A stretch of DNA of 64,000 nt from Laetmonice hystrix (GCA_965235115.1 OZ249436.1:9610001-9674000), one strand, 5' to 3'. Positions 7,741 through 60,026 are shown, counted from the first letter of the stretch. Translations and numbers: made by a program. The notes: generated by a model from the letters alone, not told the origin.

Positions 7741-10173
7741 ATTACAACGTCCGACAACGTTGTATGGTAGACCCAGTGGATGTTTGCCGTAAAGGTTTAA
7801 TTAAATTAAATTTAAATAAAAGACACCGGGCTGGCAGGCACCTATGGCGCTTTTTTTTTTTATAATTTAATTTAATTTAACAGTACAGTGACACCAAACA
7901 GTACAGTGAGGAGTCCCTACATAGTACTGGCTGGCCTAGTATCCCAAGCAAACAGTACAATCTCAAATTTGTACATGCCCCAATTAACCAGATGATATCA
8001 TGTTCCAAATATTATGACACTGGGGTAAAAATTATAGAAGTTACAGTCAAGAAATAGTGTTCCAAAATTTTTAGGCCCACCCGATATATAAGGGTGGTTA
8101 AGGCCTAAGTAGGCCTACCTAGTTAGAAACTATCATGGGCCTAGAGCTTGCTCCTACTCTTCTAGAAACTCAAGAAATGAGTCCTCCTCTGAGAAATTGG
8201 ATAATAAGCGAGCGAACTAATATGTCTAAACTAAACGGGGAAAAAGACCAACATGGGATTCTGCAGACTGGCAAATTTTATTCGATCTCAAACCAAACAA
8301 TTATTCCTCCTGACCCTTGTGTGTCAGATCAACTGAAAATGACCACTTCAAACCACAGCATGGTTCTATAAATAGCACCTGCTGTGTGTTAATTCCAACC
8401 CTGTACATGACGGTGAATGTCACCTGCAGATGAACACGGTGGCTTCTGTACATTACATATTGCTCCAAAAGGTAGTCTTCAAACATATCGTATTTACTTG
8501 AGCCGTCATTGTAACAAAACAATCCCCTAGGTTAATACTGGACAACTATGATCTAGGAGATGAAAGATTCACTGACGGGAACATGCACCAAAATACGCAG
8601 AAATTTTTCACAGCAACACAAATAGCTCAACTGGAAGAAAGTAGGCCTATTCTATAATACATAATTTACTACTCAATACACAGAGTAATTCTGACCTTAA
8701 TAAATCGCCACGGATGATGATTGTCCGCTCAACATGTTAGCAACTAATGCAATGACCACTTCCTGAAACCCTGCAGATGTCTGACGTTAGCAACTAGCTG
8801 TCTATGCAATTATTGTGTATATTACACAGTTAATATGGCAGATATCTAAGCGAGTAAATAGATTAAAGAGCACACGACGGTGTAGAGTATCAAAGACAAC
8901 ATCCTGTCTCGGCATAGACCAGTAGACCTAGGATTAAATTAATGGCGATTCATAGTGTGCGTAAAAAAGATTTCCAACAGCAGCACGCTTGTACAACATT
9001 GACTGCAGGGACAACCAGACTGATAGATTCCAATTTGTCCTGATGAGCTGAACGTCAAAATTTCTTGGTGCCGTTATTGCTATCATGCAAACATCTGATT
9101 GCCGTACTAATGCCTAGGCTACAAGGCTTTGGAATGCAGGATATTCAGTGGCCAGTCCTTATACACCCACGGTGCACAATGTCGTAAATAATCTAGATCA
9201 ACACCGACTACCAAACGGCTGGCATAAAATCCCGCCAGGCTTTCATCAACGCAAGCCCTGACGGCAAGTGTCCTGCACAGGCTCCACCTAGTGGCGTCCA
9301 TTGGTATTAATCGCTCATGATACACCGCGCACGTACAAACATGGACACAGTCGGCCTTGCTCGCGCGGAATTATCAACTGATGTCAATAAAACAGATCCT
9401 TGAAACATTTGTGAACACTCTACGTTACACATTTCTCCGAGCATTACACTTTAACAAAACTGGAGGGGCACATCAAAAACACCAAACATCGGGTGCAAGT
9501 CAACTAATTTGTAGCAAGGTGCTAGGTAAGAACTCTCCCCTTCTTCCCAGTATCGATACCGATAACCGCGCCATCTTGTGGGAATAACAAATATAGCAAC
9601 CAAAGTGCAAAGCATGGACGCGTCGAGTTTCCACTGTATGAAAAAACGCAAGCATTTCAGACGAAATCGATAAGTTCGAAGTAAACATGCTTGTATCTGA
9701 TAGAAAATGCTAGGCAAGGCACAAATGGCAATGTATAAAAATGAATAGTATATTGAAAGTGCATGGTATAATTATTATATCCGAGCTGGTATCCACTGGT
9801 TGGTAGACTACCAGATTATATCAACATCACAACTCTCCGTACCTACGGTAGCTATCATAGTAACAGGATTACTGGTTACCATAGTAACCACCTATGTGAC
9901 CTCAACGGCCCCACCCCTGCCTTTAGCTTGCTTAACCAAGCATCGCTGACTCTCTCGTCTAGATACTTAATGATCTAATAGTTATTATTAATTGTATTTC
10001 TTTTCTTCATTTCATCAGTCTCGGAATATATTTCATTCTGATAACTTTAATTAACGGTATTTTTACAATGCAGTTTCTCATTTACATTCCGTCGTTTTCA
10101 CATTCTTTCCTTGACCATTGACGTTCCTGCGTGATGTTTTGTGCCTAGTTATCTATTACCCCGCCAGGTTCGC

Positions 10174-13200: not shown

Positions 13201-16200
13201 CACTGCACTGGGGCGGTACAAGTGTTCAGGCAAAGGTTCTCTCACGCTGTCTTCCTGCTGGACGAGGGAGAATGTTTCTGACGGAGTGTAGAGGCGAGGG
13301 CCGCCGCCGCCGCCGGAGTCGGACCCGTCTCTATAACATGCGGGTACACAACCATGCAACCGTGGCAGTCAGTTAACATCACTGACGGCACTCAGCCAAC
13401 AGCCGCGATAACCAACAAAACGACATTTCCATAGACATGGCTTGGAAAAATCGATATGGGTGTGTTACTATCGTACTTGGGGGTGGTAGGGTTGTCAAAC
13501 TGGGTCGAACAAATGACCAGGTAAGCGTGAGAAAAACCGGTGGAGACGGAGAGTCACTGTGATCGCAAACCCTCCCCCCCCGAACTTTTATCGGACCACG
13601 CCCTCCTCTGATAGATTCAGTGAATGACACGTTAACAATTAAATTATCACTATCTCTTCCTGCTACTCTTTACCATTCATGGCTAATTTTAAAAGTTGTG
13701 ATAAGTTTTTACCGGTATATTGGGTGGTTAATATTTGAGATGTATTATGTCGGTTTGTCATCTTTCAGACTCACTACGTATGAATTAGTTTTAATGTCAA
13801 AGCTGATGTATTTGGACTGTACAGAGTCAGTCACACAATAATCGATTTCCTTCTCGGCCTCCTCCAACAACTTTTATCCGTAATGTCAGAAATACAAAAT
13901 ATAGTGCTACCATGACAAAACAGCAACTACTCTCTAAGTTCTTAATCCAAAACTGACTAGAACATCTCTAGTTTCTATGTCTAAACATCAGACCCTTCTA
14001 GACAAAGACATACAAGACCAATAAAACAGTTTGGAAAAGGTTAGATTTTAAACACAAACTACCTCAAGTTTCCTGGTGGTTACTAGAATATCTATTGCAA
14101 AAATAATGCCACACAAACCCATATTCCCACTAGAATCCTACCGAGAATATATCACGTCACCCGATTCACAGTGTTTTAGCACCAAATCATTTGTTAGTCA
14201 GGTTGGAATTACTCTAGCATCAACAACGTTCTCCACACCACTAAATAAGGAGCGAACAGTTACACAACACACTATTCAGTCTGCATTCCTTTCATGCATG
14301 TAAACAATGAAGTATTTTCAACTGGAAAATTGACGGAAATGCATGTATGTATGTGTGTATGTACCTGCGCCATGGTGGAGTCGGATCTGTAAAGGAGAGA
14401 GATTTGTAAAAGTGATCATTAAACGGCGGACTGGTAAGAAATTCTCACCCGGAGCAAATGTCAACCACAGTTTGACCACCCAACATCTCAAAGTGACCCT
14501 TATCGTGGTTTGTAAAACGATATCAGACCTCAACATGTCAAACATGCTACAATGCTAAATTTGTTCACATCAGTATTTGTATCCATTAACTGAAATCCAC
14601 GTTTCTAAGCCAATTACCGGTATAACTACGTGTCTAAGCTCCTGTGGTGCTTTTTCCGTTATAATTTTTCATGATGAATTGGGCCGCATCTTTTCAAATA
14701 AAAACACCACCTTGAGTCATTACTAACATATTACATGTATATTGCCGGTACATGTGGTGTTATATAAGAAATGCGTCTACAAGTGAAGAAAAGCCTTTCA
14801 GCCTGGTATTACCGCCCGACATCAGACCCTACAGATGACGTTTTATCACCATAGGATTCTTTGATGGAACTGTTGCTATACAATCCCATGGGAGAGTTGA
14901 ACTGGGTGTGAACGACATTCCTGGAGGCTGGGTAGGATGTATGACTGGCCGGGGACGGGCCTCGACCTGACTGTCGGTACGTATCTACCTCTGAAATCAG
15001 CACACACCATGCAGCTAACACACGGCCAGAACATGGCAAACACGACGTGTGACAGGCAACTAATAAAACTGTTCGTCCAGAGAAAAACGTGGGGGGGGGG
15101 GGGGGGTGAGGATTCAAACGTTTTCAAAATGTGGAATTGTGATGATTAGGAACAGAAAATAAAATCGATACAGCTAAAGTCAGTCACAAACATTAAAGCC
15201 ACTCAGCACACAATTAACTCACGATCTTACAAGTGCATGACGTTACAAACGCGTCCAGTAACGGTTCAAATCAGTCTGCAATACATCTGACAGGTTGGAA
15301 GGACTCAGATATCTTTATAGCGTAATCTTTAAGTTTATTTAGTTTACACGTCAAATCTAAATGCTATGTCTAGCAATCTTCCATTCATTTGTACTGGTAA
15401 ATTTACTACAAATCACGCAAAGGCAAACCTAAAGGACCGTCAGGTTCCTACGTTTTTTGGCTCTTCATGCACTGTGATTCGCAGGGTTTTATAGAATGAA
15501 AGTCATTGCTAATTTTAGTGGGATCTTTTCTTTTTCTCCTGCTTACTGAAATATTCCAGTTTCATTAATCACTTCCAAAATACCAAATCCAGAACTCCTC
15601 AGCAGTAATCTAAACAATTTAGACATTGCGCTTATTTTCAGTTACAGTGATCGTTTGACCTTACCATTGCTGCCCGAGTCCAACTGATTTTGAAGCATTT
15701 TGAAAGTCTTCGACTTAATGTTGGAACTCGACGTGTCTGGATATTGGTTTTCCTCCTCCTGTTGTTGTACAAGGCTTTGTGTGGGACTACTGAAGGCTGC
15801 CGAGCGAGGGCTGTCCCGTTTTGTGGAGGGTTTCCAGACAGGAGTTGTGACCACAGGCTCTGGGGCCGGCGGCGATTTGTCGACCTTCCAGGGCGGAGTG
15901 GCTGCTCGAGGTTCAAACCTCGTCGGTGAGGGCACAGGGGACGGTTTCTTCTCCAGACCAGTTTTCCAGGGAGGGGTGGGGGCCCCAGTTTTGGACTGGG
16001 ATGAGTTAGTCTGGGACGGGGAATGGCCGGTGTTATAGACGTCACCATGCAAACCACTCGGGCTTTGGCTGTGGTTATGGTTATGGTCATGCAACATGCT
16101 ACCACCAGGTGGCGTGGGCGACGAGGAGGAACCATCATCACTACTGCAAGAGAAAGGCACAGAAATATGTGAGGCTGAAGGAGAGACATCACAGGCAAAT

Positions 16201-19200: not shown

Positions 19201-22200
19201 AGTGGAGCCACCTCCCCCGACTATTCTGACCTTGCTCACTGGGCCAGATGGCAAGGTTTAACCCGCACCGCGCCATGTTCACAATGTTCTCAAACTGAGC
19301 TTAGCTCGAGATCATAGAGTACTGACGTGCAGATAGCCTGCAGAGTAATACCCGCAGGGATTAAAAAAACATAATCAGCCTTGTTTTAAGGTCAGGACAT
19401 TTGTGTGTATCGCATGTCAATGTTTGACTCGCTACATGTACAGAGAGGGGGGCGGCTAATTGGAGGGAGATCAAATAATGTCACCCAGCTCCCTTAAAAA
19501 AATTAACACCTAAAGGTCATGCTGGAGTGTTCTGACACATTAACAAGTTTTATATCTTCACACAATCTCAACTAGTGATGTCCAGACTAGAATACAAATT
19601 AAACCAAAATATGTCAGTCCATTTGAAGAGAAATAAATGGGATCGACTTTCAAATTCATAAATCCTTTTCTGACCCGCAACTGAACGCAATGTTTGATAT
19701 GATTTAAGACATTTTTACTGGAGTCAAAAAAGAGTAAAAATACAAAAAAACATACATGTAATATATACAGAATGATATCCAACCCCTTGAAACATAATTT
19801 CCAACCTTTTAAATATTATTATTTTTGTTTATTTAAATATTTACAGTACTTTTACTAAAGGATTATGTCTTAAATTAGTACGCCCATCTCTTGAAAATAG
19901 CAGGTCTCCGACGAATTATTTCAGATATTAAATAAATCGTTAAAGAGCCTTACAGGTTGTTGGCTGGGTGGCGGCTGATAGCTGGGCTCTGCGGGTGGTT
20001 GATAAGGAGCATAGGTAGAAGGAGCTGGCGCCTGAGCCATCGGCCGGGAAGCACCAGAGGTACCTCTACAAAATACAACAAAAGTAATCGTCAATATCTT
20101 TAAACATGAAACGACCAGTCGTGTCGACCTACCAGTGGCAGAGGTACCTCTACAAAATACAACAAAAGTAATCGTCAATATCTTTAAACATGAAACGACC
20201 AACAGTGCAGAGCTATTCACAGGCTTACTCTGGGGCATCATCTATTACTACAACCATGGAGAACTTCATAAAACTGTGCACTAGCAGACCGGAAACTTTA
20301 CTACAACCATGGAGAACTTCATAAAACTGTACACCAGCAGACAGGAAACTTTACTACAACCATGGAGAACTTCATAAGACTGTGCACCAGCAGACCGGAA
20401 ACTTCACTACAACCATGGAGAACTTCATAAAACTGTACACCAGCAGACCGGAACCTTTACTACAACCATGGAGAACTTCATAAAACTGTGTGCACCAGCA
20501 GGCCGGAACCTTTACTACAACCATGGAGAACTTCATAAAACTGTGCACTAGCAGACCGGAACCTTTACTACAACCATGGAGAACTTCATAAAACTGTGCA
20601 CCAGCAGGCCGGAACCTTTACTACAACCATGGAGAACTTCACAAAACTGTACACCAGCAGACCGGAACCTTTACTACAACCATGGAGAACTTCATAAAAT
20701 TGTGTGCACCAGCAGGCCGGAACCTTTACTACAACCATGGAGAACTTCATAAAACTGTGCACTAGCAGACCAGAACCTTTACTACAACCATGGAGAACTT
20801 CATAAAACTGTGCACCAGCAGGCCGGAACCTTTACTACAACCATGGAGAACTTCATAAAACTGTGCACCAGCAGACCGGAAACTTTACTACAACCATGGA
20901 GAACTTCATAAAATTGTGTGCACCAGCAGGCCGGAACCTTTACTACAACCATGGAGAACTTCATAAAACTGTGCACCAGCAGACCGGAAACTTTACTACA
21001 ACCATGGAGAACTTCATAAAATTGTGTGCACCAGCAGGCCGGAACCTTTACTACAACCATGGAGAACTTCATAAAACTGTGCACCAGCAGACCGGAAACT
21101 TTACTACAACCATGGAGAACTTCATAAAATTGTGTGCACCAGCAGGCCGGAACCTTTACTACAACCATGGAGAACTTCATAAAACTGTGCACCAGCAGAC
21201 AGGAAACTTTACTACAACCATGGAGAACTTCATAAAACTGTGCACCAGCAGACCGGAAACTTTACTACAACCATGGAGAACTTCATAAAACTGTACAACA
21301 GTGGACCGGAAACTTTCTATGGTATTTTCAATCAGAAATAGAAATCAATTATACCTGAGGAGTCTATATTTGATCACAGCATGAGTACTTCACCACACTG
21401 CCATGCCGATAGCTGTGGGGTTCAATTACCAGTGACATTTAATACGACCATTTCCAATGCATGCGGTTGAGAGCCTTCTCGTTTAGGACCAGCCGGTTGA
21501 CATTACAGAATCACTGCGCTACACAGAACCTGTCCGTAGTAACCACAGCCGTCGGCTTAAACAACACTCCTGTAAATTACTGTGCCCTCAAGCCGTGTTT
21601 AAAATGAAATCACGGTTCTCTCCAATGACTACAGTCGACACCAACATCAGGAAAAACGCAATTCGTCCCACTCTACCCCTCTACGACACCGTAGTGAGAT
21701 AAAAAATAAATCTCACACAAACTATTCATCAGCAAAGGTCTCGTGATTACCACCAACAGCGCCAAATATAACACTGCCCAGAATTATTTGAAACCAAAAT
21801 AAGTACCGTGGTAACCTTTTTATGTGTTCTTTTTACCAGTATTTATAGGCGACCTGTACCCTGGTCTTCTAGTCGGGACAGGCATGTAACACTTGTGCAA
21901 ACCAGTTGGTATTTGGAAAGGTAGTAGTCAGGGTTTCTTGCAGACCCGTTTTTTGGCGGGAGACTCCTTCTAAAAAAATCAGTTACTCTACCACATGTAC
22001 TACCAAAAGTTTCCTGGCTTTACTCCTTCAAAATGCCTACCACTACGCTAACCCCCCACCCCCCACCCCCCCACCCCCGTGGTGATAAGTCTGCTTATAA
22101 CACACACATCGAACTCCTCCATGTAACCAACTGTAATAATGACTTTCAACTTTCAAACTATTCAAACTTTGATGTCGAAAACGACACCTGTTTTAAACCA

Positions 22201-28200: not shown

Positions 28201-29321
28201 TGGTTGCCTTTTATGGCGGTGGGTCTGGTGTATTTTGAGTTGGTACTGCTGTGTGGTTGGCGGGTTCGAACTTGTGGTTTTGCCGACACACGTTATCTGA
28301 ACAGTGCTGAGTTCACTGATCACACACTCTCACTCTCAATGTTCAAACCGTAAGTGATCAGTTCACTTATGATAAATAAGCAGACTATACTATAGGATCC
28401 AATCAAGAAGGGAGCCAGTATAGGCACCAGTATAACATTGATTCATCTAAATATTAAATAACGGGGGCAAATAATTCTAGGGATACTGGGTACCTTCATT
28501 CTTGACCCAAAACATTTATAAATAATCTCGTTCATCTCCAATGGAGATGACATAATAAATGGCCGACTCATAAAATTCTGGGCAGTATCCTCAGGACAGG
28601 ACGGCAAAGAATAACTCGGACCTAGAAGAATATTGATGACCTACATAGAATGAGGCCGGTCACACATGCTTGGCCTGGGGTGAACCAGAGTTAGCCACAG
28701 ACCATTCACGCTACTATTTAGTTTTCTGCCTTTCTTTCCATGCAAATTGAGGGAGTGAATCACCTGTGGGGAGAACACAATGAAATCTAACAGGATGGGG
28801 ACTCGCTTTCTTCCCATTTGGCAAATTTTCCAAACGGATGGTATAGGCCTATCTGTTTACTACTTTCATCTATTTATTGGGTGTGTCCTAAACTTGACCA
28901 ATGGCTAGCCCAATTACTGAGGTAATCCTACTAACTAAGATCAGGCTACATAATCCTGCAGCCTTGTCTGAAGTGCGTGGCGCTAAGGAATCTACCGGAG
29001 TTGTAAGAACATAATGTCAGTAAGAAATACAGTATTAGGGGCCAAGTTGAGATGTCCGGACACTCGGCCCACACGGCCGGCTCCCGGGCTGAGATCGGCC
29101 GGTAGACCGCTGACGGCACCGGCCGTGCATGGGTCCCAAAGTGACCGTCGAGGAAATACTTGTGACACACTTTCCGCCAAGTTTGCGCCCTATTCCCACT
29201 CAGTCCTTACCCGTTGGATGGTGATCGCACAGCCGAAATCCTTTCCTCCATACATCCGAAATCCCCATGGCGTATTCGTGTCTGACCGGTCAAGTTTGGC
29301 GGAGAGGGCTAACATCGACAT
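10174..29321 (-). CDS. Zasp: Gene A: PDZ and LIM domain protein, Zasp52/LDB3/Enigma-like (PDZ, 2 ZM motifs, AM motif, 3 LIM), 12 coding exons, ~711 aa
   Basis: Exons 29321-29211, 28140-27989, 20065-19954, 16765-16611, 16143-15665, 14990-14813, 13330-13139, 12354-12118, 11524-11338, 10946-10826, 10592-10477 and 10269-10174 all have GT-AG boundaries with matching phases and sum to 2136 nt. N-terminal PWGFRMYGGKDF PDZ and three C-terminal LIM domains. Exact orthology is not resolved. Confidence 0.92.
10477..10592 (-). CDS. Gene A exon 11 (LIM2 end / LIM3 start)
   Basis: DWQAMFQTKCYGCQFPIEPGDRWVEALNQNWHSECFNCS; ttccag acceptor, gtaagt donor; phase 1 to 0. Confidence 0.95.
10826..10946 (-). CDS. 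Gene A exon 10 (LIM2)
   Basis: DCVNALRNTYHPHCFLCVHCRQPIGSGSFHLEDGNPYCDK; cag acceptor, gtacgc donor; phase 0 to 1. Confidence 0.95.
11338..11524 (-). CDS. Gene A exon 9 (LIM1 body / LIM2 start)
   Basis: GPFVLALDKEWCPDHFTCSNPNCKVPLIDIGFVEEEGQVFCERDYATYFAPTCGKCSGKIVG; tttcag acceptor, gtaagt donor; phase 2 to 0. Confidence 0.95.
11503..11970. repeat. 52-bp minisatellite, 9 copies, built from the LIM1 exon splice acceptor
   Basis: gcctctgaaa recurs at 11521, 11573, 11625, 11677, 11729, 11781, 11833, 11885 and 11937. On the minus strand the unit is pyrimidine tract + CAG + first ~22 nt of the exon. Confidence 0.97.
12118..12354 (-). CDS. Gene A exon 8 (Pro/Ala linker and first two Cys of LIM1)
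   Basis: GPSASSAPAP...RTGGGIPICTKCGIAI; ttcttcag acceptor, gtacgc donor; phase 2 to 2. Confidence 0.9.
13139..13330 (-). CDS. Gene A exon 7 (linker with SETFSLVQQED, AM-like half motif)
   Basis: DGSDSGGGGGPRLYTPSETFSLVQQED...; tag acceptor. The donor gtacgt at 13138 was chosen because it gives the phase 2 needed by the next exon. Confidence 0.75.
14813..14990 (-). CDS. Gene A exon 6 (second ZM motif)
   Basis: RNVVHTQFNSPMGLYSNSSI matches the Zasp motif; tttcag acceptor, gtaata donor; phase 1 to 2. Confidence 0.88.
15665..16143 (-). CDS. Gene A exon 5 (Pro/Ser-rich, ends in KSKTFKMLQ AM-like motif)
   Basis: ctcttgcag acceptor, gtaagg donor; phase 2 to 1; open frame of 159 codons. Confidence 0.85.
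16611..16765 (-). CDS. Gene A exon 4 (first ZM motif)
   Basis: NYNKAARPFVPGGGGTVPVVMNKQYNTPLSMYSVDNVMDSL; tttgtag acceptor, gtaggt donor; phase 0 to 2. Confidence 0.92.
17122..17930. repeat. 51-bp intronic minisatellite, ~16 copies
   Basis: Unit acactattcgggctggagatgttcct(c/g)ctgagaactaggcactaataccga. Confidence 0.96.
18118..18405. repeat. 57-bp intronic minisatellite, ~5 copies
   Basis: Unit ctaccttgtacatggtcctagtagtcaggtagtttatacaataagccttgactttca; gives a 19-aa periodic ORF. Confidence 0.95.
19954..20065 (-). CDS. Gene A exon 3 (post-PDZ Pro-rich linker)
   Basis: GTSGASRPMAQAPAPSTYAPYQPPAEPSYQPPPSQQP; ttttgtag acceptor, gtaagg donor; phase 2 to 0. Confidence 0.85.
20056..20201. repeat. 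Direct duplication (~62 bp, 84-bp spacing) of the exon 3 acceptor region
   Basis: agaggtacctctacaaaatacaacaaaagtaatcgtcaatatctttaaacatgaaacgacca occurs at ~20056 and ~20140. Confidence 0.93.
20243..21300. repeat. 53/55-bp intronic minisatellite, ~20 copies
   Basis: Unit ttactacaaccatggagaacttcataaaactgtgcaccagcagaccggaaact; 53 and 55 alternate in 20834-21160. Confidence 0.96.
27989..28140 (-). CDS. Gene A exon 2 (PDZ C-terminal half)
   Basis: VTPGSLAAKCGVCTGDTITKIGDTPTDSLRHKEAQGMIMRAGNSLELALL; tag acceptor, gtgaga donor; 152 nt; phase 0 to 2. Confidence 0.93.
29211..29321 (-). CDS. Gene A exon 1 (start codon, PDZ N-terminal half)
   Basis: gccATG; MSMLALSAKLDRSDTNTPWGFRMYGGKDFGCAITIQR, then gtaagg; PWGFRxxGGxDF is the ALP/Enigma PDZ signature. 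Confidence 0.95.
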
Positions 29322-29879
29322 GGCGCTGCCGTCACCTGTGCAGGCAGGCGAGAGAAAACCTGACCGGCAGACGGTGCGCTTGCTCCGGTCGCCCGAAATG
29401 TGGGCCGGGCCGCTTAGTGCCACCCGTGCGCCGACCGCCCGACCGCCTGCCCTCCCGATTGAGTCACGGTTTTGCACGCGGCACGAATGTTTTCGATCCT
29501 GGTTCACTGACGCCGACCACGTGGGTGTAGGCCTACTCGCTCGCCGGGTAAACAAACAGGGCCACGTGGCACTCGCGATGACCAATGCTGTCGCTGTGCG
29601 AGTCGGTCCACCCCACAATCAGGATAGATGTATGGTTATTGGTTCGATCTTTTTGTTGGACGGATCTACTTTTATGTTCTTAATGATAGGGCCTAGACTG
29701 CACGTGGATTACGACACTGAGCTGGCCTACATGTCGTGGGAAGTTTTCTGAGTACTATTAGGCCCTATTATAGTTTGGCACCGGAGCAACACGGGGAGGA
29801 GGTCAGATCAAACTGGAGTCGTAGATCTACTGGAGAGCAGCATATTGAAACTGGCCATGCTACGACTTTATAATTTAGG

Positions 29880-33365: not shown

Positions 33366-33447
33366 TTAGAGGTCAGAGGTCGCGGCACGATACCGGTCCT
33401 CCTCTAGTGCTGCCCTCTGGGCGCCCGAGACGATATCAGGGTGTTTG
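33366..33447 (-). CDS. Gene B terminal exon ending ...RAATSDL*
   Basis: actttcag acceptor, phase 2 entry; KHPDIVSGAQRAALEEDRYRAATSDL TAA. Confidence 0.75.
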
Positions 33448-36400
33448 CTGAAAGTATCAGGGTCATGTAAGTGAAACAGGAGGATCACGTTTGGCCTGGA
33501 CCGTGGCAGCCATGGCACGAAAAGGTTTTTTTTTTTACCTAAAAACCTTACAAATCGCATGGAAGTGCGCATGTACTTAACATTGCTATGGAAAGAGATT
33601 TTAAAACCCAATTTACTAACATGATCAAATGTCGCCATGCACACATACGTATTTGTAGGCCTACTTATGTGGAGAGAGTCCCTCGGTTGAGCTATTCTAT
33701 TCACTAATTTGGGAAATATGACAAGAAAAACAAAATAATTACACGAGAAGCAACATCAAACAAGGATGTTTCTTTGTGCTGAAGACGTGGCGCCTTACCT
33801 TTCAATTTCATCCAGTTGGCGATCGGCTTGGCTTTGGAAGGTTTCTACAACGTTTTGGGCGGAGTACATTCCGAGCGGGGTGTTGTACTGCTGGGGCATG
33901 AAGACCTTGACCCTGGGGGAGCTTTGCCTGGCCATGGCCGCCTCCTGCTTCCTCTGCTCCTGGTAGGCGGACCGGGGCGGCGGCAGGCCGCTCGAACCTG
34001 CTGGAGGCTCTGCAGGGGGGCACCACAACCAACATCAGTTACTTCATTCTCGTACTTATACCTACATACCACACAACAAGGGCTGTCAGGCCCTATTTGT
34101 CAAGGAATCTCACTCTAAATAAATAAAAAGAATCTGCTGATTCTACAAATATTACTGCATTACTGGTAACGTGCACTTTAATAATTTGACACGAGAGATT
34201 GGATTTCAATTTATGTTGATTTTGGAAGCTTTAGTAATTCTTTGAGCATTATTCGAGAATTTGCCTGGTTAACTTCATAGATCAATCATTTCACTGCCAA
34301 ATTGCCAAATAACTTTGAGAACCGAGTTATTAGGTCTAGTATTCACAACGCCCATATGAAGAACGTACATTGAAGCCCTTTTCATCAAATTTAACAACGC
34401 TATTTCCGGGACAATTATAAAGTTCTCACAAAGTTCCTTAAACTTAATCATTTGCAGCAATTATTAGGAAAATAATTATTGCAATGTCACGATAAACATC
34501 TTAACTTCTATGGGTACACTAGACCAAAAATAAATATGCACACACCACGACTACGATCTACTCTACTTGGGGGAGGCGGATACACACATTAAAGCTACAC
34601 TGGTATGACAGACTTTTCTACTATATCGCTACGAGTGTGGTTTTCAACCTGTGGTTCTTGAACTCACTTCCAAGGGAAATTTCATGTTTTCTAAGAGGAA
34701 CTGAACAGTCACCCGCTTTGTGCAATTATGCCTACCTCTTTTGAAAGGGATGATTTGCAAATAATTATCACCCAAAGTTGAAGCTGAACTCATAGAATAA
34801 TTTGAGGAAAGGAAAACGGCTGGGAACCACTCTTCAAGGGAAAGAAGCAGGCGGTGTTGTGTTAGACAATATCTCTCTTACCTATAGATACACATGTAGT
34901 TTATTGTAGTTAATCAACAATACACTGGGCTAGGTATAGGCTAGTTAGTCAGATCTAATCCACAGTCAATTCTACCGTTCGCTCCTGACTCGGGAGCGAA
35001 GCGAAGAGCCGACCCTGGGTTAGATCTGTCTAACTAGTATAGGCCGGCTTGTGTAGCTTTAACACTGTGTATCTGCGTGATTATGTTATTCAACCAAGAC
35101 TGCTGGCAAACGACAACAAACATGTTCACGCGCTGACTGATAACAAAGTTATACAAATCAAATTAACCTAAGCAGTTTCTTCTCCGAGTTTCTGCGATTA
35201 TCTTGGCATTAATTTTATAACTTTCTATGAATTAACAAAAATACGCAGCGCGTCTCTCCCTTCGGTACTACTTGATTCGGCATGAGTCGACGCAAATCTG
35301 CAAGATCAGAATTTGTTATTACGAATAGTTGGGATAGAGAATATCTCTTTCTTGAATAAACAACATGTCAAAAATGGCAGCTCTCTGCAATAAAATCACA
35401 AATAGTTACAATAATTCGTAAAACTCTAAATAGAGTTTGTGGTCAGTTTCAAACAAGCCTGCCGAGAAGACTCTTGATACTATAGCTGCGAGCTGAGACA
35501 TACTCAAACATCTTTATTAAAAGTTCTGAGTGTCGGTATCAAAGTCCCCTTCCCTCTGAAAGAATAGTAATTTTTACCCTTCATAAAATCATTGACTGAT
35601 CAAACATGACCCCTGTTAACTCCACTCTCGGCTACACTAGTCTTGCCCCCGCAACAGTCAAAGAAGGGCACTTCTGATCTTTTGACGGAAGGAGTTGTGC
35701 ACCTGCTGTATACCTTCTGTGAGAGTAGTGGTCAATGACATCATCAATGTATACAAATAGCGTCGTGCTGATCTCTGACCAGCTGACGAGTCGTCCGTCT
35801 GCACCTAGACAGTGTACTGTGTGAGGGTGACAGGGAGCAGAACATTACCTGGCTCGTTCTCCACCATGCTAGAAAGAACATTGAAGGTTCTGGACTGCAC
35901 TGGACCACGTTGTTCCTCCTCCTTGAGCAAGTCGGCATACTTGTGGTACAGAGCCGACTCTTTGGGTTCCATCTTGGCGGGTTCCTGGGGAGGCTGATCT
36001 GTAATAGGTGGCGGGGGCGGAAGGTTAGGGGCACTCGGCGGCTCGGGCCAGTCTGCAGCTTCCGTATCGGGCGGGAAGTGGGCGGGCGGGGGAGGCGCAG
36101 GGAACTCGGAGGGCATGTACTCGGCCAGCTCCTCGGACGATTCCGACGGCGGTGGGGGCGGGAAGTCATCGGACATGGCGTCCGGTGACCGAGGCTCCCT
36201 CACCGGGGCTCGGTAAGGCTGGAACCCTGAGTTTGTGGACGCTAGGGGAACGCTAGGGGTCTCTCCCTTGGGGCTGACCTTGGTGGTCTCACGGGCAGAA
36301 ACATTGATGGTCGATTTCTTGTTGGCAGATTCATGGACCTGAAATTTGGCTGGTATCCTCAGTCCTTTCCTGGGAGGGTCTGATGAGGAGGGGGAGTCAG

Positions 36401-39400
36401 ATTTGGTAAATTGTCCCGGAATTTTAATTTTTCCTGGTTCTTTAGGTTTGACTTCTTCCTTGTCGCTATCTGAGTTTGTGAATTTTGACGAAATCTTTAT
36501 GGTTGCTCTAGGAGCTTGGTTTATGGTAACCTGGTTTGGTGCAGTGGTGGACGTTTGGAATGTGGAATGCACAACTGAAGCTTTTGCCTGTTTTGCATCA
36601 TTCTCTATTGTGGATGGACTGCCGTGGAACTTGGCTGGAATGTGTACTGTTGGTCTGGGTGGCTCGTTCAATGTTACCGTCATGGGAGCGTTAACTGAAG
36701 GGTCGGACTTTAATGTAGGAGTGACTCTATCTGCAGGTGGTTCTCTTTCACTGGACAAACTTTGGGATTCATTTTCTTTAAACTTGGCAGGAATCGTAAT
36801 GGTTGGCATTAATCCTTCATTTAGGGCGACTGTCTCGGGAGGTTTGGACAGGCTTACTTCTGTAGTTCGCGCTCTTGAAACCACATCGTCATTAGATACC
36901 TTGGGAGCTATGTGCAATGTGGCTCTTGGTGCCTCATTCAGGGTGGCTGTGGTGGAATACGTGGACGGTAGGCTGGGCTCAGTCTTGGCGGGAATATGGA
37001 TGGACGCTCTGGGTGGTGCAGATATAGTATCTGAGGAGGTTTCAGTTTGTAAGACTTTCCCTGAGTGTGTCCCTGCTATGTGACCATTGGATGGCTTGAC
37101 GTGTTGGGACATGGGGCTGATGTTGATGGTTGCTCTTGGGGCCTCGCTCACTACGTGCGTTGTGTGCGACGTTTGCGCAGTGTGGATATTTGATGGCCAC
37201 TCAATTTTGGCTTGTGGTGATTTGTTAACAATACGGGGTGCAGGGTCTGTCTGAGTTTGGGGTGCCTGAAACTTGGCTGTCAGCTCAACCACAGATCTAG
37301 CGGGCTGGGAATTTGTACCCGTGTGGCCATTGTCAATAGCGGCGAAGGTGTCGCTTGGTTTGTATAGCGGGGACGGGTCGACCATGCCTTGGGATGGATC
37401 ACCTACAGTAACGTCCAGGTTCATGGTCGGGGCCTCGGAACCGTTTCTATAGGACACGTCATTGGTGATCTGAATGGTGGGACGGTTCTTTCCAACCACC
37501 ACGGTAGACATGTACCTACTCGGAGTACCGTCTGACCCAGGCGGGGTGGGACTCGCTGACTCCCGAATGACGGCGCTGGCGGGAGAAGGGTTGGGGGGCA
37601 TAGTGACAGAAGGTTTGGGGGTCATACTGACAGGTTTGGGGGTCATAGTGACAGAAGCTTTGGGGGTCATAGTGACAGAAGGTTTGGGGGTCATACTGAC
37701 AGAGGTGATGGGTGGCGGAGCCGGTGTCCTGTCCAATAAGGACCCTGAGCCTGTGGAGCTGCTGGTTAGAACCGGGGGCGTGTACGGTTTGGGAATGGGT
37801 CTGTACAGGGACTGCTTTGGCGTAACACCGGTGGAGAATCTCCTTTCTGGTTCAGTTAGTAGTTTGGGCTGGACACCTGTGGAGTGTCGGCGTGCTTCAT
37901 CATCAGGTGTGATGGCACTTAGAACGGGTGAGGACCGTTCCTGCTGCTGTGGTGTTAGGACTTTGGGAGGACAGGTGGCTGTGGTGGGTGGAGGGGGTAC
38001 GGGGTCCTCAATGACTCGGCCCACTACGGGTTTACTGGTCTTGGAGGGCGGGTGGTTAGGTCGGCCATACAGTTTCTCCTCTTCATCCATCTGTTTGACA
38101 AGCCGCATGGTTTCAGATGCTATGTATGGTTTAGGGCCGGAGGGACTGCTGTGAAAAAGCACACAAACAAACCACAAATATAACTCATGCATGTTAATAA
38201 AACTCTCCAAACGTGAGAAGTCCATGTATGTAATATGAGAATCAGAAATCTTTAAATTTTACAAACGGGCATTAATTTATAGGACCTTCATGATCTCAGA
38301 TCTTGATAAAAGGAGAGTTTGTTTTGTTACAGCTTCGATCTAAGGTTACCGAATAAAACTCTGGGTTTTTAAAAAACAGGAATTGCACAATTCCTGATTA
38401 TTTGAAAGTCTAGGACATGTATGACGTCACGGGTGTCTTTTTCTGAACGCTAATTTGGAGGCTATGACCTTCAAAGTTAAGGGACTGCGTAGGCGACTGT
38501 TGTCATATAAAAATCAATGCATGGACTTCAGTAAATGTTATCACCAACTATCAAACTAGGGTAAATAAGTCACTCTGTATGGCAGACTCCACAGTTTTCC
38601 ATTGACTCACACATTTCAGGGATGAAAGTGAAGGGTGCCAGTTTTCGTTTGACGATAAAGAGATGGGCTGGCCCTGTGGCTACAACCAGTAATACCATCT
38701 CATAGGAACTGCACGCATCGGAAACGGCAGGGTAGAATTCTGGGATGGCATTAAGTCCCAAATTTGATCAAAAGTTTTCAAAAGCTAGGCATTTGTCTTG
38801 TACCACTATGCACCTAGCACTTTAATTTCTGAAACATGACGTCAATGTGTCAAAATCTTTTAAAAATTATAAAATTATACGTTTTTTTAAATGCTCGTTC
38901 TTCATGCAGGGTGTCACTCCCACACGACCAAAGATGACACACTTGCTGTACTTGCCTTTACTTCATTCTCCGATACGATAAGATACGATACGAGTCGTTT
39001 CCTTCCGTTTTCTGCCTTTCATCGATCCCTGTATTTGAACAAGGATCGCTTTATTCAAGAAACCAAACGTTACAAAATCTCTTACCTGGTCTCTTCCGGT
39101 TTTTGTGCCTCGGGGATGGAGAGTGCCTCCATCTTGTCTCCTACTGTGTCCATGGTAACGTCATGCGAGTAGAGGCCTATGGGACTGTTGAACTGTCTGT
39201 TAGCTATAACCCTGGGGTTGCTGCCTGGGCCCTGGGCTGGCACGTACACTGACGGAGCAGAGGGAGTGACTGGTTGGGGTTTGCGAGCTAACATGACGGG
39301 CGGTGGGGGTTCTCCTGTTAACAACAGCAAGCATGCACATGCATTTTATAAACAATCAACTCCAACAACAGAAACACCAACAATAACGTAACGCAAAGAC

Positions 39401-42400: not shown

Positions 42401-45400
42401 ACTGACTTCTACCCTTGAGATAAGTATTGCGTAATCCCCAGGACTTTCCCGACATTTTACTGCCTACAGGGAAGGACATTCTGTGCAACACCTCCCCTTT
42501 TTAATACAAAAAATAAAAACTATTTCCAACAGAACACTAGCTTGTTATGTAACCAACACTGCTATTGACAAGATCCCCTGAATGGATAAAATAGTGTGTA
42601 CGGAGGGTGGATGCATCGGTTTCATTGACACTACAGGGCTTGAAGACCACGATCAAATCCTTTCTTCTACACACAAGCTCTACACAGCTGCACAGAACCA
42701 CATCGGGACCCAGGTGTTCCCTGTCCGCGACATCTTACCCTCATTAGACAAGAGGCTGGCAAGGATGTTGAAGGTTCCCGACTGCCGCACTTCGCCCTGT
42801 CTGTTTTCGGGTTCAAGATGTTGATATTGAGGGTAGTAGGCTTGCCTGAAACGCAACACATACCATGTTAGAACATTATGTGAGAAAATGTGAACGGAAA
42901 TGTGAAAGCCATCACAAAAATCCAAATCCCCGGTGACCACTCAACAGCTGCAGGATTTAGCTTGTTGATTCGCTCTTGTCGTCGTTGCTGTGAAACTGTT
43001 TTTCCGCTGAGTCACTGAAATACCGACATTCGTTTTTATTCCCCCAATATATCAAGGAGATGTACTGAGTTAACCCTGGAGGTCACGGCGACTTGCTGAG
43101 ACATCGCAGGACACCCGTTGATATAAAGACAAGACAGTCTGATGAATCCACACTCGTGAGCAGGATCCCTCTACCTCTGGCGGTGACATCGAGCCCAGTC
43201 ATCACAGGCTGTCTATCACAGCAACTGATCCAACTGATCTGAAAGATAATCAACCAGCAGGTCTCCACAACACCCGCCCAGCACACGGGCAGCTGCCTAC
43301 ATCTCTTACCTTCGTGTTCCAGAAAACTACGGACGACATTGAATGAGCCGGACTGGACGGGACCCGCCTTGCTGAGGGCCTCGGCTGGGATAAACACCTG
43401 GTAGTGACACTGGGGGGACCTGGAATCACCACACCTGGCTACAGACGAGCCATCATGGGGCAGTTATATGGGCTCCCTGGTTTATTACGTCACCTCTCCA
43501 TCTAAATCACTTGTATTGATTGATGTCAGTCTGACACGTATTTCTAAATCACTTGTATTGATTGATGTCTGTCTGACACATATTTCTAAATCACTTGTTT
43601 TGATTGATGTCAGTCTGACACGTATTTCTAAATCACTTGTATTGATTGATGTCAGTCTGACACGTATTTCTAAATCACTTGTATTGATTGATGTCAGGCT
43701 GACACGTATTTCTAAATCACTTGTTTTGATTGATGTCAGTCTGACACATATTTCTAAATCACTTGTTTTGATTGATGTCAGTCTGGCACGTATTTCTAAA
43801 TCACTTGTATTGATTGATGTCAGTCTGGCACGTATTTCTAAATCACTTGTTTTGATTGATGTCAGTCTGACACATATTTCTAAATCACTTGTATTGATTG
43901 ATGTCAGTCTGACACGTATGTCTAAATCACTTGTATTGATTGATGTTAGTCTGACACGTATTTCTAAATCACTTGTTTTGATTGATGTCAGTCTGACACG
44001 TATTTACACCTCAAACTCTGTCTTTACATCTCGATTACTCTGAGCTTCAATCATCCCCAAACAGTCTCAGTGGCAATCACATTTCTTTCTCCAGGTATAT
44101 TAAATACAAATGCCATTAGTTCGATTATAATCAATCGTTTTGTGGTGGTATCCTTTTCTAATCCATGAAACAATTTCTTCTATTCGATATTTTTCCACAT
44201 GTTGCAGACTGCTGGTTGGTACCAGTACCCAGTTCTGCACACAAAACTAGCCAGGTGATGCTCAATCCGCCAGGTGGCAGGTCAGCGTTACTGCCGTTAA
44301 TTTTATCATCGCCTGTAATTTACACCCGAGGTCGACAGTCCAGAGCATCCCTGAATCAACTCTTAATGTAACAATAATCATCGAAAATTTACGCCTGCAA
44401 TAAAATGATAATATCACAATATTACAAAGATATTTAATATGTTTTGATTAATCTTAACTGATGCAATTTAATTTTCATAAATTAAGTTTTCCAAAGTACA
44501 AAATTATTTGAAAGTTTCTGAACTTTGAGAAACCTTAAAACTTACCCAACCATCATAAATAACTCTTTTGCCACTGTTATTTTTATGTAAACAATACCCA
44601 GGAGAGTGTTTGCATGGACCCCGTTGAGATAAATGGAGGCTATTTGTAGTGGTAGGCCCCGTTACTGTCGGTGTCGGGGGTGAGAAGAGTACTTACTGTG
44701 GGCTGGACCTGTAGTGTGGCTCAGGCTGGACGGCGGCGGGTGGCGGCTGAGGCCGTGTGCTGGGAGGCTCGAACGGTCGGGCCGTGGCTCTGTGAAACTC
44801 CTGCGGCTGCTGGTAGGTCTGCGTGGGGGGAGAGAGAGAAAACAGGCGCCCTGTTCACCAGTACAGATACATGGTAATGCCCTCATATAGGGCTCCTCGT
44901 GTGTATACTTCCCAGGTTTAGCTCTGGATATCTTGAAATCTCTGCGATTCGTAAACTCTATAAATTCTATTCTGAGGCGGATTTTCAAAAATAAAACTTT
45001 CGGAAACTTCCATGTATAAAAGTTAATGCCGGAGCACCTACACTTGTCTTGTGAAGACGGTTGTGAATAGAGTTACAGGTGACCAGACTACAAGCAACTG
45101 TTTGTCTACTAGTAGTATAGGCTTATTGACTAAGGACTCATACATTTGAATTCATGTGTAAGGTTACCAAATTACAGGGGAAAGGTTCCTTAAAAAGTTA
45201 TCAAATGTGGCCTGTCAGCAATATTTACCACCTAATGGTAATCACTACTCACGATACTGAAAGTAATCCTAAACACACTAGGATTGATCGACTAATTCTT
45301 CCCACGGTAGGAGGTAATTAAGTAACATCGAATTATATCTGTGAAGGTTAATCATTCATTCACCATAACAACGTATGGCTGGTATACAAAACAAGCAATT

Positions 45401-59127: not shown

Positions 59128-60026
59128 TTTTTCAGTTACTTGTTGTAAGGTCAGTAGTTCCCCCCGGGATACCCCGGTTTTTCAGTTACTTGTTGTAAGG
59201 TCAGTGGTTCCCCCAGGATACCCCGCTTTATCAGTTACTTGTTGTAAGGTCAGTAGTTCCCCCCGGGATACCCCAGTTCTTCAGTTACTTGTTGTAAGGT
59301 CATTGGTTCCCCCGGGATACCTCGGTTTTTCAGTTACTTGTTGTAAGGCCAGTGGTCCCCCCGGGATACCTCGGTTTTTCAGTTACTTGTTGTAAGGTCA
59401 GTGGTTCCCCCTGGGATACCCCGGTTTTTCAGTTACTTGTTGTAAGGTCAGTGGTTCCCCCCGGGATACGCCGATTTTTCAGTTACTTGTTGTAAGGTCA
59501 GTGGTTCGCCCCGGGATACCCCGGTTTTTCAGTTACTTGTTGTAAGGTCAGTGGTTCCCCCCGGGATACCCCGGTTTTTCACTACTTGTTGTAAGGTCAG
59601 TGGCTCCCCCCGGGATACCCCGGTTTTTCAGTTACTTGTTGTAAGGTCAGTAGTTCCCCCCGGGATACCCCGGTTTTTCAGTTACTTGTTGTAAGGTCAG
59701 TGGTTCCCCCAGGATACCCCAGTTTTTCAGTTACTTGTTGTAAGGTCAGTGGTTCCCCCCGGGATACCCCGGTTTTTCATTTACTTGTTGTAAGGTCAGT
59801 GGTTCCCCCCGGGATACCCCAGTTTTTCAGTTACTTGTTGTAAGGTCAGTGGTTCCCCCCGGGATACCCCGGTTTTTCATTTACTTGTTGTAAGGTCAGT
59901 GGTTCCCCCCGGGATACCCCGGTTTTTCATTTACTTGTTGTAAGGTCAGTGGTTCCCCCCGGGATACCCCGGTTTTTCATTTACTTGTTGTAAGGTCAGT
60001 GGTTCCCCACAGGATACCCCGGTTTC
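59128..60026. repeat. 49-50-bp minisatellite, ~18 copies, probably amplified from a SINE interior
   Basis: Unit tttttcagttacttgttgtaaggtcagtggttccccccgggataccccggt; the last copy continues ccggtttcctcccgctaaaactga. Confidence 0.95.

What the first reader, a model, noticed from the sequence alone, without database searches (positions are those of the whole stretch)
36345..37481. Array of PxIxIT-like motifs in the giant exon: a possible invertebrate calsarcin analogue
About eight spaced repeats occur: RPTIQIT (perfect PxIxIT, 37481-37464), RATINIS, RASIHIPAK, RATLHIAPK, MPTITIPAKF, RPTVHIPAKF, RATIKISSKF, KIKIPGQF and GLRIPAKF. PxIxIT is the established calcineurin docking motif. In vertebrates calcineurin is tethered to the Z-disc by calsarcins/myozenins, which also end in a PDZ ligand. 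A multivalent docking array plus a TSDL tail in a Zasp paralogue suggests a convergent, undescribed Z-disc calcineurin scaffold; alternatively the IPAKF part is a new repeated binding motif.
Basis: partly seen in the sequence, partly recalled or inferred. Interest (0 to 1): 0.72.

Follow-up and report, generated by a model that had tools for sequence, protein, structure and literature searches.

The report
Conserved repeat array in Zasp-like exon
A long, optionally spliced, disordered exon of a muscle-scaffold (Zasp-like) gene in what is probably an annelid worm carries about eight conserved copies of an undescribed 18-residue motif.

Summary
The minus-strand exon 38148-35849 (766 codons) carries 8 strong and about 5 weak copies of an 18-residue unit, consensus x-T-L-N-E-a-P-R-a-T-I-x-I-P-a-K-F-q, far above chance.

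The exon is transcribed and spliced, and it has orthologues in two related genomes. The units are better conserved than the spacers: 50% against 26% identity to the distant orthologue.

The calcineurin reading fails its membership tests:
- The residue read as the motif's proline is one of the least conserved columns (P in 3 of 22 copies).
- The residue read as "T6" is proline in 16 of 22 copies, which the validated consensus forbids.
- Only one window copy (PTIQIT) fits even the loose published consensus.
- With the published scoring matrix the best window scores are 18.3 and 17.8. The three training peptides I rescored gave 21.3-30.7, and 29% of shuffled exons reach 19.
- The distant orthologue has no match at all, and RPTIQIT aligns there to RAQIKLP.

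An internal, in-frame acceptor, also present in the orthologue, skips the whole array. This resembles the alternative giant disordered exon 15e of Drosophila Zasp52. The binding partner is unknown, and interest is modest.

The parts
35849..38148 (-). Giant exon (2300 nt, 766 full codons). Acceptor AG at 38150-38149, donor GT at 35848-35847.
   Evidence: Open frame and splice signals read. An RNA-like contig joint 35849->34009 with GT..AG ends. Orthologous open frames P0001 and P0002.
37104..37157 (-). Unit 1 (HVVSEAPRATINISPMSQ)
   Evidence: Unit profile 10.1 bits. Own-genome search 26.2 bits.
36978..37031 (-). Unit 2 (DTISAPPRASIHIPAKTE)
36894..36947 (-). Unit 3 (ATLNEAPRATLHIAPKVS)
36777..36830 (-). 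Unit 4 (VALNEGLMPTITIPAKFK). This is the best published-PSSM PxIxIT score in the window exon, 18.3, below the 21.3 of the weakest training peptide I rescored.
36624..36677 (-). Unit 5 (VTLNEPPRPTVHIPAKFH), the copy closest to the consensus
   Evidence: 36.2 bits
36477..36530 (-). Unit 6 (VTINQAPRATIKISSKFT)
36405..36458 (-). Unit 7 (EEVKPKEPGKIKIPGQFT), second half of the unit only
36339..36392 (-). Unit 8 (PSSSDPPRKGLRIPAKFQ)
37464..37484 (-). RPTIQIT, the only copy that fits the validated PxIxIT consensus. It is the least unit-like copy: the unit profile did not report it in the window and scored its P0001 equivalent -2.3 bits. PSSM score 17.8. It aligns to RAQIKLP in P0002.
37404..37430 (-). 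Weak copy PTMNLDVTV, identical in P0001
37269..37298 (-). Weak copy RSVVELTAKF, conserved in P0001
37191..37214 (-). Weak copy QAKIEWPS. Its P0001 equivalent, RAKIEIPSKL, scores 19.5 bits.
36267..36314 (-). Weak copy STINVSARETTKVSPK
   Evidence: 1.8 bits in the window, 11.4 bits in P0001
35999..36000 (-). Internal alternative acceptor AG, in frame. The short form begins at 35998 and skips the whole array.
   Evidence: In one search a loose end at 35999 carries the end of the 41.2-kb AM exon, and the same loose end occurs at the ZM1 acceptor (39315). Sequence and frame were checked. A pyrimidine tract followed by CAG sits at the same codon phase in L001.
39086..39314 (-). Upstream ZM exon (DUF4749). 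It is in frame with the giant exon, but that junction was not observed.
   Evidence: Pfam hit, sequence, splice from the AM exon into it
33799..34009 (-). Downstream ZM exon, joined to the giant exon's donor
   Evidence: Joint. Pfam DUF4749, 27.1 bits (just under the 28.7 cut-off). Sequence.
33366..33447 (-). Putative last exon ending ...TSDL plus stop. The splice is inferred and no RNA contig was seen on it.
   Evidence: The orthologous exon in L001 ends ...SSDF.

Best explanation
The stretch is the central part of an alternatively included, intrinsically disordered giant exon. The exon belongs to a LIM-less Zasp/Enigma-family paralogue with a PDZ domain, two ZM motifs and an ...SDL tail, in a genome that other notes of this scan call an annelid.

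The exon carries 8 strong and about 5 weak copies of an old, lineage-restricted 18-residue unit, x-T-L-N-E-a-P-R-a-T-I-x-I-P-a-K-F-q. Its constrained positions are Pro7, Arg8, Thr10, Ile11, Ile13, Pro14 and Lys16.

My reading is that each unit is a short strand-forming linear motif. On this view the array acts as a multivalent, low-affinity docking surface for a Z-disc or thin-filament partner that is still unknown, and it probably binds by adding a beta-strand to the partner. That would give the long isoform extra avidity at the Z-disc equivalent, much as the alternative disordered exon 15e does for Drosophila Zasp52. The invariant R-x-T/S just ahead of the strand could let a basophilic kinase switch binding off.

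The array is not a calcineurin PxIxIT array. The likeness arises because P-R-x-T-I-x-I overlaps the PxIxIT pattern in two registers without meeting it.

Shown here: the exon is real and spliced, the alternative acceptor exists, the repeat exists, its conservation pattern is as described, and the PxIxIT criteria fail.

Inferred: that the units bind a partner, the beta-augmentation mode, the kinase switch, and the analogy to Zasp52 exon 15e.
For: Repeat statistics are.

Conservation:
- There are two orthologous exons, P0001 (63% identity) and P0002 (33%).
- Every unit is retained in P0001 and several in P0002.
- The eight strong units are 50% identical to P0002 against 26% for the rest of the region (Fisher 1.7e-6).
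- Column information is highest at I13, R8, P14, K16, I11 and P7.
- Conserved residues use varied synonymous codons, and DNA copies are only 70-77% alike.

Disorder:
- No Pfam hit.
- 72.7% of residues are P, S, T, A, E, K, Q, N, G or D, and 3.7% are aromatic.
- The AlphaFold2 single-sequence model has pLDDT 33 throughout. It places several low-confidence strands in the array region, some of them on units.

Expression and splicing:
- Run X4 covers exons only.
- It shows the joint 35849->34009.
- It also shows the AM exon joined both to the ZM1 acceptor and to the internal acceptor at 36000/35999.
- A matching acceptor sequence is present in the orthologue.

Gene context: DUF4749 and LIM exons, and separate PDZ starts for the two tandem genes.

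Precedent: Zasp52 exon 15 uses alternative splice sites to give 130-4429-nt variants. Variant 15e encodes a 1475-residue disordered region needed for Z-disc stability, with conserved motifs of unknown function (PMC13521563).
Against: - No partner was identified and no binding was tested.
- The unit profile finds nothing else in the 627-Mb genome, nothing in PDB sequences and nothing in the ESM Atlas. No second protein therefore shows the motif acting as a general docking site.
- Only three species are available.
- The junction from the ZM1 exon into the giant exon's 5' acceptor was not seen. One RNA-like contig (38053-38218) instead reads through that acceptor. The long form could therefore partly reflect intron retention or another transcript start.
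- X4 is not on record as RNA. That it is RNA is my inference from its exon-only coverage and its joints.
- The low AlphaFold confidence could reflect the missing alignment rather than disorder.
Confidence: 0.6

Rival explanations
1. The array is a multivalent set of degenerate PxIxIT sites that tethers calcineurin at the Z-disc, making this protein a functional analogue of calsarcin/myozenin.
For: - PTIQIT is a literal PxIxIT and is identical in P0001.
- The unit P-R-x-T-I-x-I lies one substitution from the pattern. In the sister species two units, PRITIN and PRVTIN, score 26.7 and 24.2 with the published PSSM, within the range of the training peptides I rescored.
- Wigington et al. note that multivalent SLiM binding can combine one consensus site with degenerate ones.
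- Vertebrate Cypher/ZASP is reported to bind calcineurin.
- The region is probably disordered and accessible.
Against: - All the validated motifs listed in the paper's training set are described by P[^PG][ILVF][^PG][ILVF][^PG].
- P and I at positions 1, 3 and 5 are strongly conserved across substrates (PMC6728138).
Position 6 is Pro in 16 of 22 copies, which the consensus excludes.
- In the other register position 3 is mostly Ala, which scores -5.7 in the PSSM.
- The best window scores are 18.3 and 17.8, against 21.3-30.7 for the three training peptides I rescored. 29% of shuffled exons reach 19.
- The two high-scoring P0001 units score only 8.5 and 13.3 in the window.
- P0002 has no consensus match, and its best score, 12.0, is not on a unit.
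- RPTIQIT aligns to RAQIKLP in P0002.
- There is no LxVP.
- No Pfam hit, so no similarity to the calsarcin family was detected.
Confidence: 0.05
2. One or two copies (KNRPTIQITNDV, GLMPTITIPAKF) are weak, recently acquired calcineurin docking sites in this species and its sister. The rest of the array does something else.
For: These are the two top PSSM scores in the window exon, 17.8 and 18.3. PTIQIT is identical in P0001.
Against: - Both scores are below the 21.3 of the weakest training peptide I rescored and are typical of shuffled sequence.
- PTITIP ends in Pro, which the consensus forbids.
- Arg directly before the Pro of RPTIQIT costs -5.3 in the PSSM.
- Neither site is conserved in P0002.
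- MPTITIP is RHTIKVP in P0001.
Confidence: 0.1
3. The units are structural rather than docking elements. On this view the paired short strands (VTLNE and TIxIP) either zip into a beta-rich assembly within or between molecules, or act as an elastic spacer.
For: - Each unit has two strand-prone halves separated by a Pro-Arg turn.
- AlphaFold draws several low-confidence strands in the array region.
- Zasp proteins are known to oligomerise (PMC13521563).
- The same exon also holds a proline-rich TPKPSV tandem repeat.
Against: - Spacers between units vary from 6 to about 33 residues and diverge freely, which is unlike a folded repeat.
- pLDDT is 33 throughout.
- Copy number differs between species, with an extra unit in P0001 and fewer clear ones in P0002.
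Confidence: 0.12
4. The conserved feature is mainly a cluster of basophilic-kinase sites (R-x-T/S followed by a hydrophobic residue), so the array is a regulatory phospho-region.
For: Arg8 occurs in 17 of 22 copies and Thr or Ser at position 10 in 16 of 22. The exon also keeps RRHSTG and RRFSTG, which resemble protein kinase A sites.
Against: The most conserved columns, I13, P14 and K16, lie downstream of the acceptor residue. Units 7 and 8 lack the Thr but keep I-P-x-K-F. This fits a binding strand better than a bare kinase site.
Confidence: 0.08
5. The array is a neutral relic of internal duplication with no function of its own.
For: It is restricted to a narrow lineage. Nothing similar occurs elsewhere in the genome or in the databases searched.
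Against: Units are conserved above spacers at 33% overall identity. Synonymous codons vary at invariant residues. DNA copies are old.
Confidence: 0.05

Closest known systems
Drosophila Zasp52 exon 15e (alternative giant disordered linker; Ho and Schock 2026, PMC13521563)
   Same: - Both are in a Zasp/Enigma-family Z-disc scaffold gene.
- Both are one very long exon whose length is set by alternative splice-site choice: 130-4429 nt in the fly, about 150 or 2300 nt here.
- Both encode a disordered region with conserved short motifs of unknown function.
   Different: - No detectable sequence similarity. A search of 1.84 billion representative proteins found only two true relatives (P0001, P0002), neither carrying a source name.
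- The fly exon lies between LIM1 and LIM2 of a LIM-bearing protein. This one lies between two ZM motifs of a LIM-less paralogue.
- The 18-residue unit array is specific to this lineage.
Calcineurin PxIxIT docking motif (NFAT PRIEIT, AKAP79 PIAIIIT; consensus P[^PG][ILVF][^PG][ILVF][^PG])
   Same: A short beta-strand motif with alternating Ile residues in a disordered region. One literal match (PTIQIT). The unit is one substitution away from a match in two registers.
   Different: - The defining Pro is not conserved.
- Position 6 is usually Pro.
- Published PSSM scores are at background level in the window exon.
- There are no matches in the distant orthologue.
- There is no accompanying LxVP.
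Calsarcin / myozenin / FATZ
   Same: A disordered Z-disc protein with multiple linear motifs. Its C-terminal ...[ST][DE][DE]L-type tail is of the kind bound by Enigma-family PDZ domains (the PDZ binding is from my own knowledge). FATZ forms a fuzzy multivalent complex with alpha-actinin (PMC8163081, title and abstract).
   Different: - No Pfam hit of any kind, so no detected similarity to the calsarcin family.
- This protein is itself a PDZ- and ZM-bearing Zasp paralogue.
- The orthologue's tail is SSDF rather than TSDL.
- Calcineurin binding is unsupported.
Drosophila Zasp66/Zasp67 (LIM-less Zasp paralogues)
   Same: A PDZ plus ZM architecture without LIM domains, encoded by a paralogue of the LIM-bearing gene. 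That the fly proteins act as blocking isoforms is from my own knowledge of Gonzalez-Morales et al. 2019. The paper (PMC6910826) was listed but I did not read it.
   Different: The duplication is presumably independent, being tandem here with gene A's PDZ start at 29267. The fly proteins are not known to carry this array.

Membership tests
Calcineurin PxIxIT docking motif | Proline at position 1 | tested here: not met
The column carries 1.68 bits, one of the lowest values. Orthologous changes include P->I, P->H and A->V.
Calcineurin PxIxIT docking motif | Aliphatic or Phe residue at positions 3 and 5 | tested here: met
In the alternative register, where P1 is Pro7, position 3 is mostly Ala, so the feature is not met there.
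Calcineurin PxIxIT docking motif | Position 6 is neither Pro nor Gly (usually T, S, H, N, D or Q) | tested here: not met
   Pro in 16 of 22 copies and Thr in 1 of 22. The consensus comes from Wigington et al..
Calcineurin PxIxIT docking motif | Score in the range of validated motifs with the published 12-position PSSM | tested here: not met
   The window maximum is 18.3 and 17.8, against 21.3-30.7 for the three training peptides I rescored. P(maximum of a shuffled exon >= 19) = 0.29. P0002 reaches at most 12.0. Two P0001 units do reach 26.7 and 24.2.
Calcineurin PxIxIT docking motif | The match is conserved in orthologues | tested here: not met
   Loose-consensus matches number 1 in the window, 3 in P0001 and 0 in P0002. 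Only PTIQIT is shared, and only with the close species.
Calcineurin PxIxIT docking motif | VIVIT-competable binding to the beta-14 groove of calcineurin A | not testable with these tools
   No binding assay is available. A complex prediction was not possible because calcineurin A of this genome could not be supplied as an unaltered sequence.
Calsarcin / myozenin (Pfam Calsarcin) | Sequence similarity to the family | tested here: not met
   No Pfam family at E <= 1 for the whole open frame.
ALP/Enigma/Zasp family (gene level) | N-terminal PDZ domain with the PWGFR...GG signature | tested here: met
   An open frame reading ...NVQTPWGFRLQGGTEYGQPITIQR lies 2.2 kb beyond the window end on the same strand (L011). 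Its link to the giant exon rests on order and strand only.
ALP/Enigma/Zasp family (gene level) | ZM motif (Pfam DUF4749) | tested here: met
   The exon at 39082-39330 scores 30 bits against a cut-off of 28.7. The exon at 33795-34028 scores 27.1 bits, just under the cut-off.
ALP/Enigma/Zasp family (gene level) | C-terminal LIM domains (Enigma subfamily) | tested here: inconclusive
   The LIM exons at 10.4-11.6 kb follow a second PDZ start at 29267 and so appear to belong to the next gene. The giant-exon transcript appears to end at ...TSDL. Read-through was not excluded.
Zasp52 exon-15e-type alternative disordered exon | One long exon shortened by alternative splice-site choice | tested here: met
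   The AM exon is joined to the internal acceptor at 36000/35999, in frame, as well as to the ZM1 exon.
Zasp52 exon-15e-type alternative disordered exon | Sequence homology to the fly exon | tested here: not met
   No named or insect-derived hit was reported in the representative search. The likeness is functional and architectural only.

The most novel reading that the evidence does not exclude
The 18-residue unit, with core R-x-T-[ILV]-x-I-P-x-K-F, is a new class of strand-forming linear motif. As a phospho-switchable multivalent array, it would tether a specific Z-disc or thin-filament partner to a splice-regulated, LIM-less Zasp isoform in annelid muscle. Low-affinity engagement of calcineurin's PxIxIT groove by avidity is not excluded as that partner.
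Probability: 0.3. Interest if true: 0.55.

Novelty: new variant of a known kind. Interest (0 to 1): 0.3.

Why it matters
Alternative disordered exons in Zasp-family scaffolds have only recently been shown to matter for Z-disc stability in flies, and their conserved motifs have no known partners.

This exon offers an unusually clean case. It has a repeated, well-defined, conserved unit in a second phylum, and a splice switch that includes or removes the whole array. If the partner were found, it could show how such disordered regions anchor Z-disc scaffolds.

The result also shows how a repeated strand motif can mimic a PxIxIT site by eye while failing the quantitative criteria.

Tried and rejected
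- Pfam on the whole open frame: no hit.
- Unit profile against PDB sequences at E <= 10: nothing.
- ESM Atlas feature search of the array: no usable hit.
- Unit profile against the whole 627-Mb genome: only the eight copies in this exon. One further hit, at E = 6 with a stop codon inside, I reject as chance.
- Three word-index protein searches and one exhaustive representative search found only two orthologues. P0003 and P0004 are low-complexity chance hits.
- No DNA could be fetched for the P0001 contig, so no dN/dS was computed.
- AlphaFold2 on residues 200-640 without an alignment gave pLDDT 33. It is usable only as weak support for disorder, so no fold search was run.
- Known linear-motif classes were checked by eye and regex and rejected. 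RVxF occurs once, at chance level, and LxVP is absent. From my recollection of the ELM patterns, SH3, 14-3-3, LC8 TQT and CapZ CPI motifs are not matched by the unit. The filamin-ligand strand pattern is one residue out of register.
- Complex prediction was not run, for two reasons. Calcineurin A and the PDZ and LIM domains of this genome are split over several exons and cannot be given unaltered. I also do not claim a specific pair.
- The sequencing-run search listed no run on record as RNA. Only one small run (X4) behaves like RNA.

Full report
**What is there**

The finding lies on the minus strand, inside an 818-codon open frame at 38258-35805. Splice signals bound an exon of 2300 nt. The acceptor is a pyrimidine tract plus CAG, with AG at 38150-38149. 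The donor is CCAG|GTAATG, with GT at 35848-35847. The in-frame exon protein, window:35850-38147:-, has 766 residues.

The protein has no Pfam hit at E <= 1. Its composition is 16% Pro, 12% Ser and 10% Thr, with 3.7% aromatic residues and one Cys. An AlphaFold2 model of residues 200-640, made without an alignment, has pLDDT 33 throughout. It places several low-confidence strands in the array region, some of them on repeat units. I read the exon as intrinsically disordered, with the caveat that the model had no alignment to work from.

**The observation**

Loose patterns for the two halves of the repeat occur 7 and 5 times, against 0.10 and 0.003 expected from shuffles, and no shuffle out of 5000 reached the observed counts.

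A profile built from the clear copies finds 8 units above 10 bits in the window exon, plus weaker ones. Aligning 22 copies from three species gives an 18-residue unit, x-T-L-N-E-a-P-R-a-T-I-x-I-P-a-K-F-q (alignment A3).

Information per column is highest at I13 (3.9 bits), R8, P14, K16, I11 and P7. It is lowest at columns 1, 9, 12 and 18.

The copies are old. DNA identity between them is 70-77% over about 30 nt, and the conserved residues use varied synonymous codons. A 24-nt tandem repeat encoding TPKPSV at 37560-37726 is, by contrast, recent (86-94% identity) and is missing from the sister species.

**Is it a real, expressed exon?**

Four runs from one sample hold the stretch. Three cover introns and exons alike, so they behave as DNA. 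The small run X4 covers exons only and carries splice joints, so I treat it as RNA, although it is not recorded as such.

X4 has contigs along the exon body. It shows a joint 35849->34009 with GT..AG ends, which links the giant exon's donor to the downstream ZM exon.

Two loose ends carry the same 29 letters, which are the end of the AM-motif exon at about 41.2 kb. One sits at the acceptor of the upstream ZM exon (39315). The other sits at 35999, inside the giant exon. There the sequence reads ...CCACCTATTACAG|ATCAG, and the junction keeps the reading frame. A short form therefore uses only the last 150 nt of the exon and skips the whole array.

The distant orthologue has a pyrimidine tract plus TTGCAG at the same codon phase.

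I did not see the junction from the ZM1 exon into 38148. One contig, 38053-38218, reads through that acceptor. How the long form begins is therefore open.

**Gene context**

Pfam finds ZM motifs (DUF4749) in exons at 39082-39330, 33795-34028 and 14809-15117. It finds LIM domains at 10.4-11.6 kb.

A PDZ start with an initiator Met (…TPWGFRMYGGKDFG…) lies at about 29267. That is downstream of a putative last exon which, spliced in frame from the ZM2 exon, ends ...AATSDL-stop at 33366. A second PDZ start (…TPWGFRLQGGTEYG…) lies 2.2 kb beyond the window's upper end on the same strand (L011).

So there are two tandem Zasp-like genes.

Other notes of this scan call the genome an annelid. I did not check this.

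**Conservation**

An exhaustive search of 1.84 billion representative proteins, plus three word-index searches, found only two relatives. Both are open frames on large eukaryotic contigs in ENA assemblies: P0001 (63% identity) and P0002 (33%).

All units are kept in P0001, which has one extra unit (TPKLDIPAAF). Four clear units and several weak ones are kept in P0002.

Over residues 215-640, the eight strong units are 50% identical to P0002, against 26% for the rest (Fisher 1.7e-6). For all 13 units against P0001 the figures are 68% and 46% (1e-5). For the eight strong units alone, the P0001 contrast is not significant (62% against 55%, P=0.18).

The units are under selection.

The profile finds them nowhere else in the 627-Mb genome, nor in PDB sequences.

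**Is it PxIxIT?**

I took the criteria from Wigington et al. (bioRxiv 10.1101/632547). All the validated motifs listed there fit P[^PG][ILVF][^PG][ILVF][^PG], and the paper supplies a 12-position scoring matrix. Nguyen et al. state that P and I at positions 1, 3 and 5 are strongly conserved across substrates (PMC6728138).

- Position 1 is column 9. It is Pro in 3 of 22 copies and is one of the least constrained columns.
- Position 6 is column 14. It is Pro in 16 of 22 copies, which the consensus excludes.

Consensus matches number one in the window (PTIQIT), three in P0001 and none in P0002.

I reproduced the published matrix. The check peptide scores 30.70 against the published 30.69. I then scored every 12-mer:
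- The window's best scores are 18.3 (GLMPTITIPAKF) and 17.8 (KNRPTIQITNDV).
- The three training peptides I rescored give 21.3-30.7.
- 29% of shuffled exons reach 19.

The "perfect" copy is the least unit-like of all. It aligns to RAQIKLP in P0002.

In a second register, where P1 is Pro7, two P0001 units (PRITIN and PRVTIN) score 26.7 and 24.2. But their window equivalents score 8.5 and 13.3 and their P0002 equivalents score less than 12, because column 9 is free to vary.

The unit therefore sits close to PxIxIT in sequence space, but it is not selected to be one. There is no LxVP.

Vertebrate Cypher/ZASP is already reported to bind calcineurin (PMC8710605). The general idea of a Zasp-linked calcineurin scaffold is thus not new either.

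**What it most likely is**

It is an alternatively included disordered module carrying a multivalent array of a lineage-specific, strand-forming linear motif. Its partner is unknown.

The closest described case is Zasp52 exon 15 in Drosophila. There, alternative splice sites give variants of 130-4429 nt. [quoted passage not shown]

By analogy, I propose that the array raises the avidity of the long isoform for a Z-disc component by strand addition. R-x-T ahead of the strand is a possible kinase switch. These steps are inferred, not shown.

**Not done**

I did not run a complex prediction. Calcineurin A and the PDZ and LIM domains of this genome are multi-exon and could not be supplied unaltered, and I do not claim a specific pair.

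**Verdict**

This is a new variant of a known kind, of modest interest.

Noticed in passing
window 35998-36000 (-); L001 12900-12906: An internal in-frame acceptor inside the giant exon yields a short form of about 150 nt that skips the array. An equivalent pyrimidine tract plus CAG, at the same codon phase, is present in the 33%-identity orthologue.
   Followed up: partly
window 36129-36167 and 36084-36107 (-): DFPPPPPSESSEE and EFPAPPPP resemble the (D/E)FPPPPx(D/E)(D/E) ligand of Ena/VASP EVH1 domains, as I recall it. The first is kept in both orthologues (EDFPPPPPTDSSDE, PEFPPPPPP).
   Followed up: partly
window 37875-37892 and 37827-37844 (-): RRHSTG and RRFSTG, which resemble protein kinase A consensus sites, are conserved in P0001. 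In P0002 they appear as RRASTG and RRLSEG.
   Followed up: partly
window 37560-37726: A young 24-nt tandem repeat (86-94% identity) encodes TPKPSV-type repeats. It is absent from P0001, and P0002 has a longer, different TPK-x-ES repeat in its place. This part of the exon evolves fast.
   Followed up: partly
window 33366-33447 (-); L001 16185-16283: The putative last exon ends ...AATSDL here but ...AQSSSDF in the distant orthologue. Only S-D-hydrophobic-COOH is conserved. No RNA contig was seen on this exon.
   Followed up: partly
window about 29190-29330 (-); L011 about 2178 (-): There are two separate PDZ starts (PWGFRMYGG... and PWGFRLQGG...). The locus therefore holds two tandem Zasp-like genes: an upstream LIM-less one and a downstream one with three LIM exons.
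   Followed up: partly
window 38053-38218: An RNA-like contig reads through the giant exon's 5' acceptor into the intron for 70 nt. This could be intron retention or an alternative transcript start, given the ATG at 38225.
   Followed up: no
P0001 residues about 296-307: The sister species has an extra unit-like insertion (TPKLDIPAAFDG) that is absent from the window, so unit number varies between close species.
   Followed up: no
window 1-8000, 20300-21300, 43468-44043, 59200-59850: Several long minisatellite arrays show up as repeated open frames in the ORF lists, with periods of roughly 850 nt and shorter.
   Followed up: no
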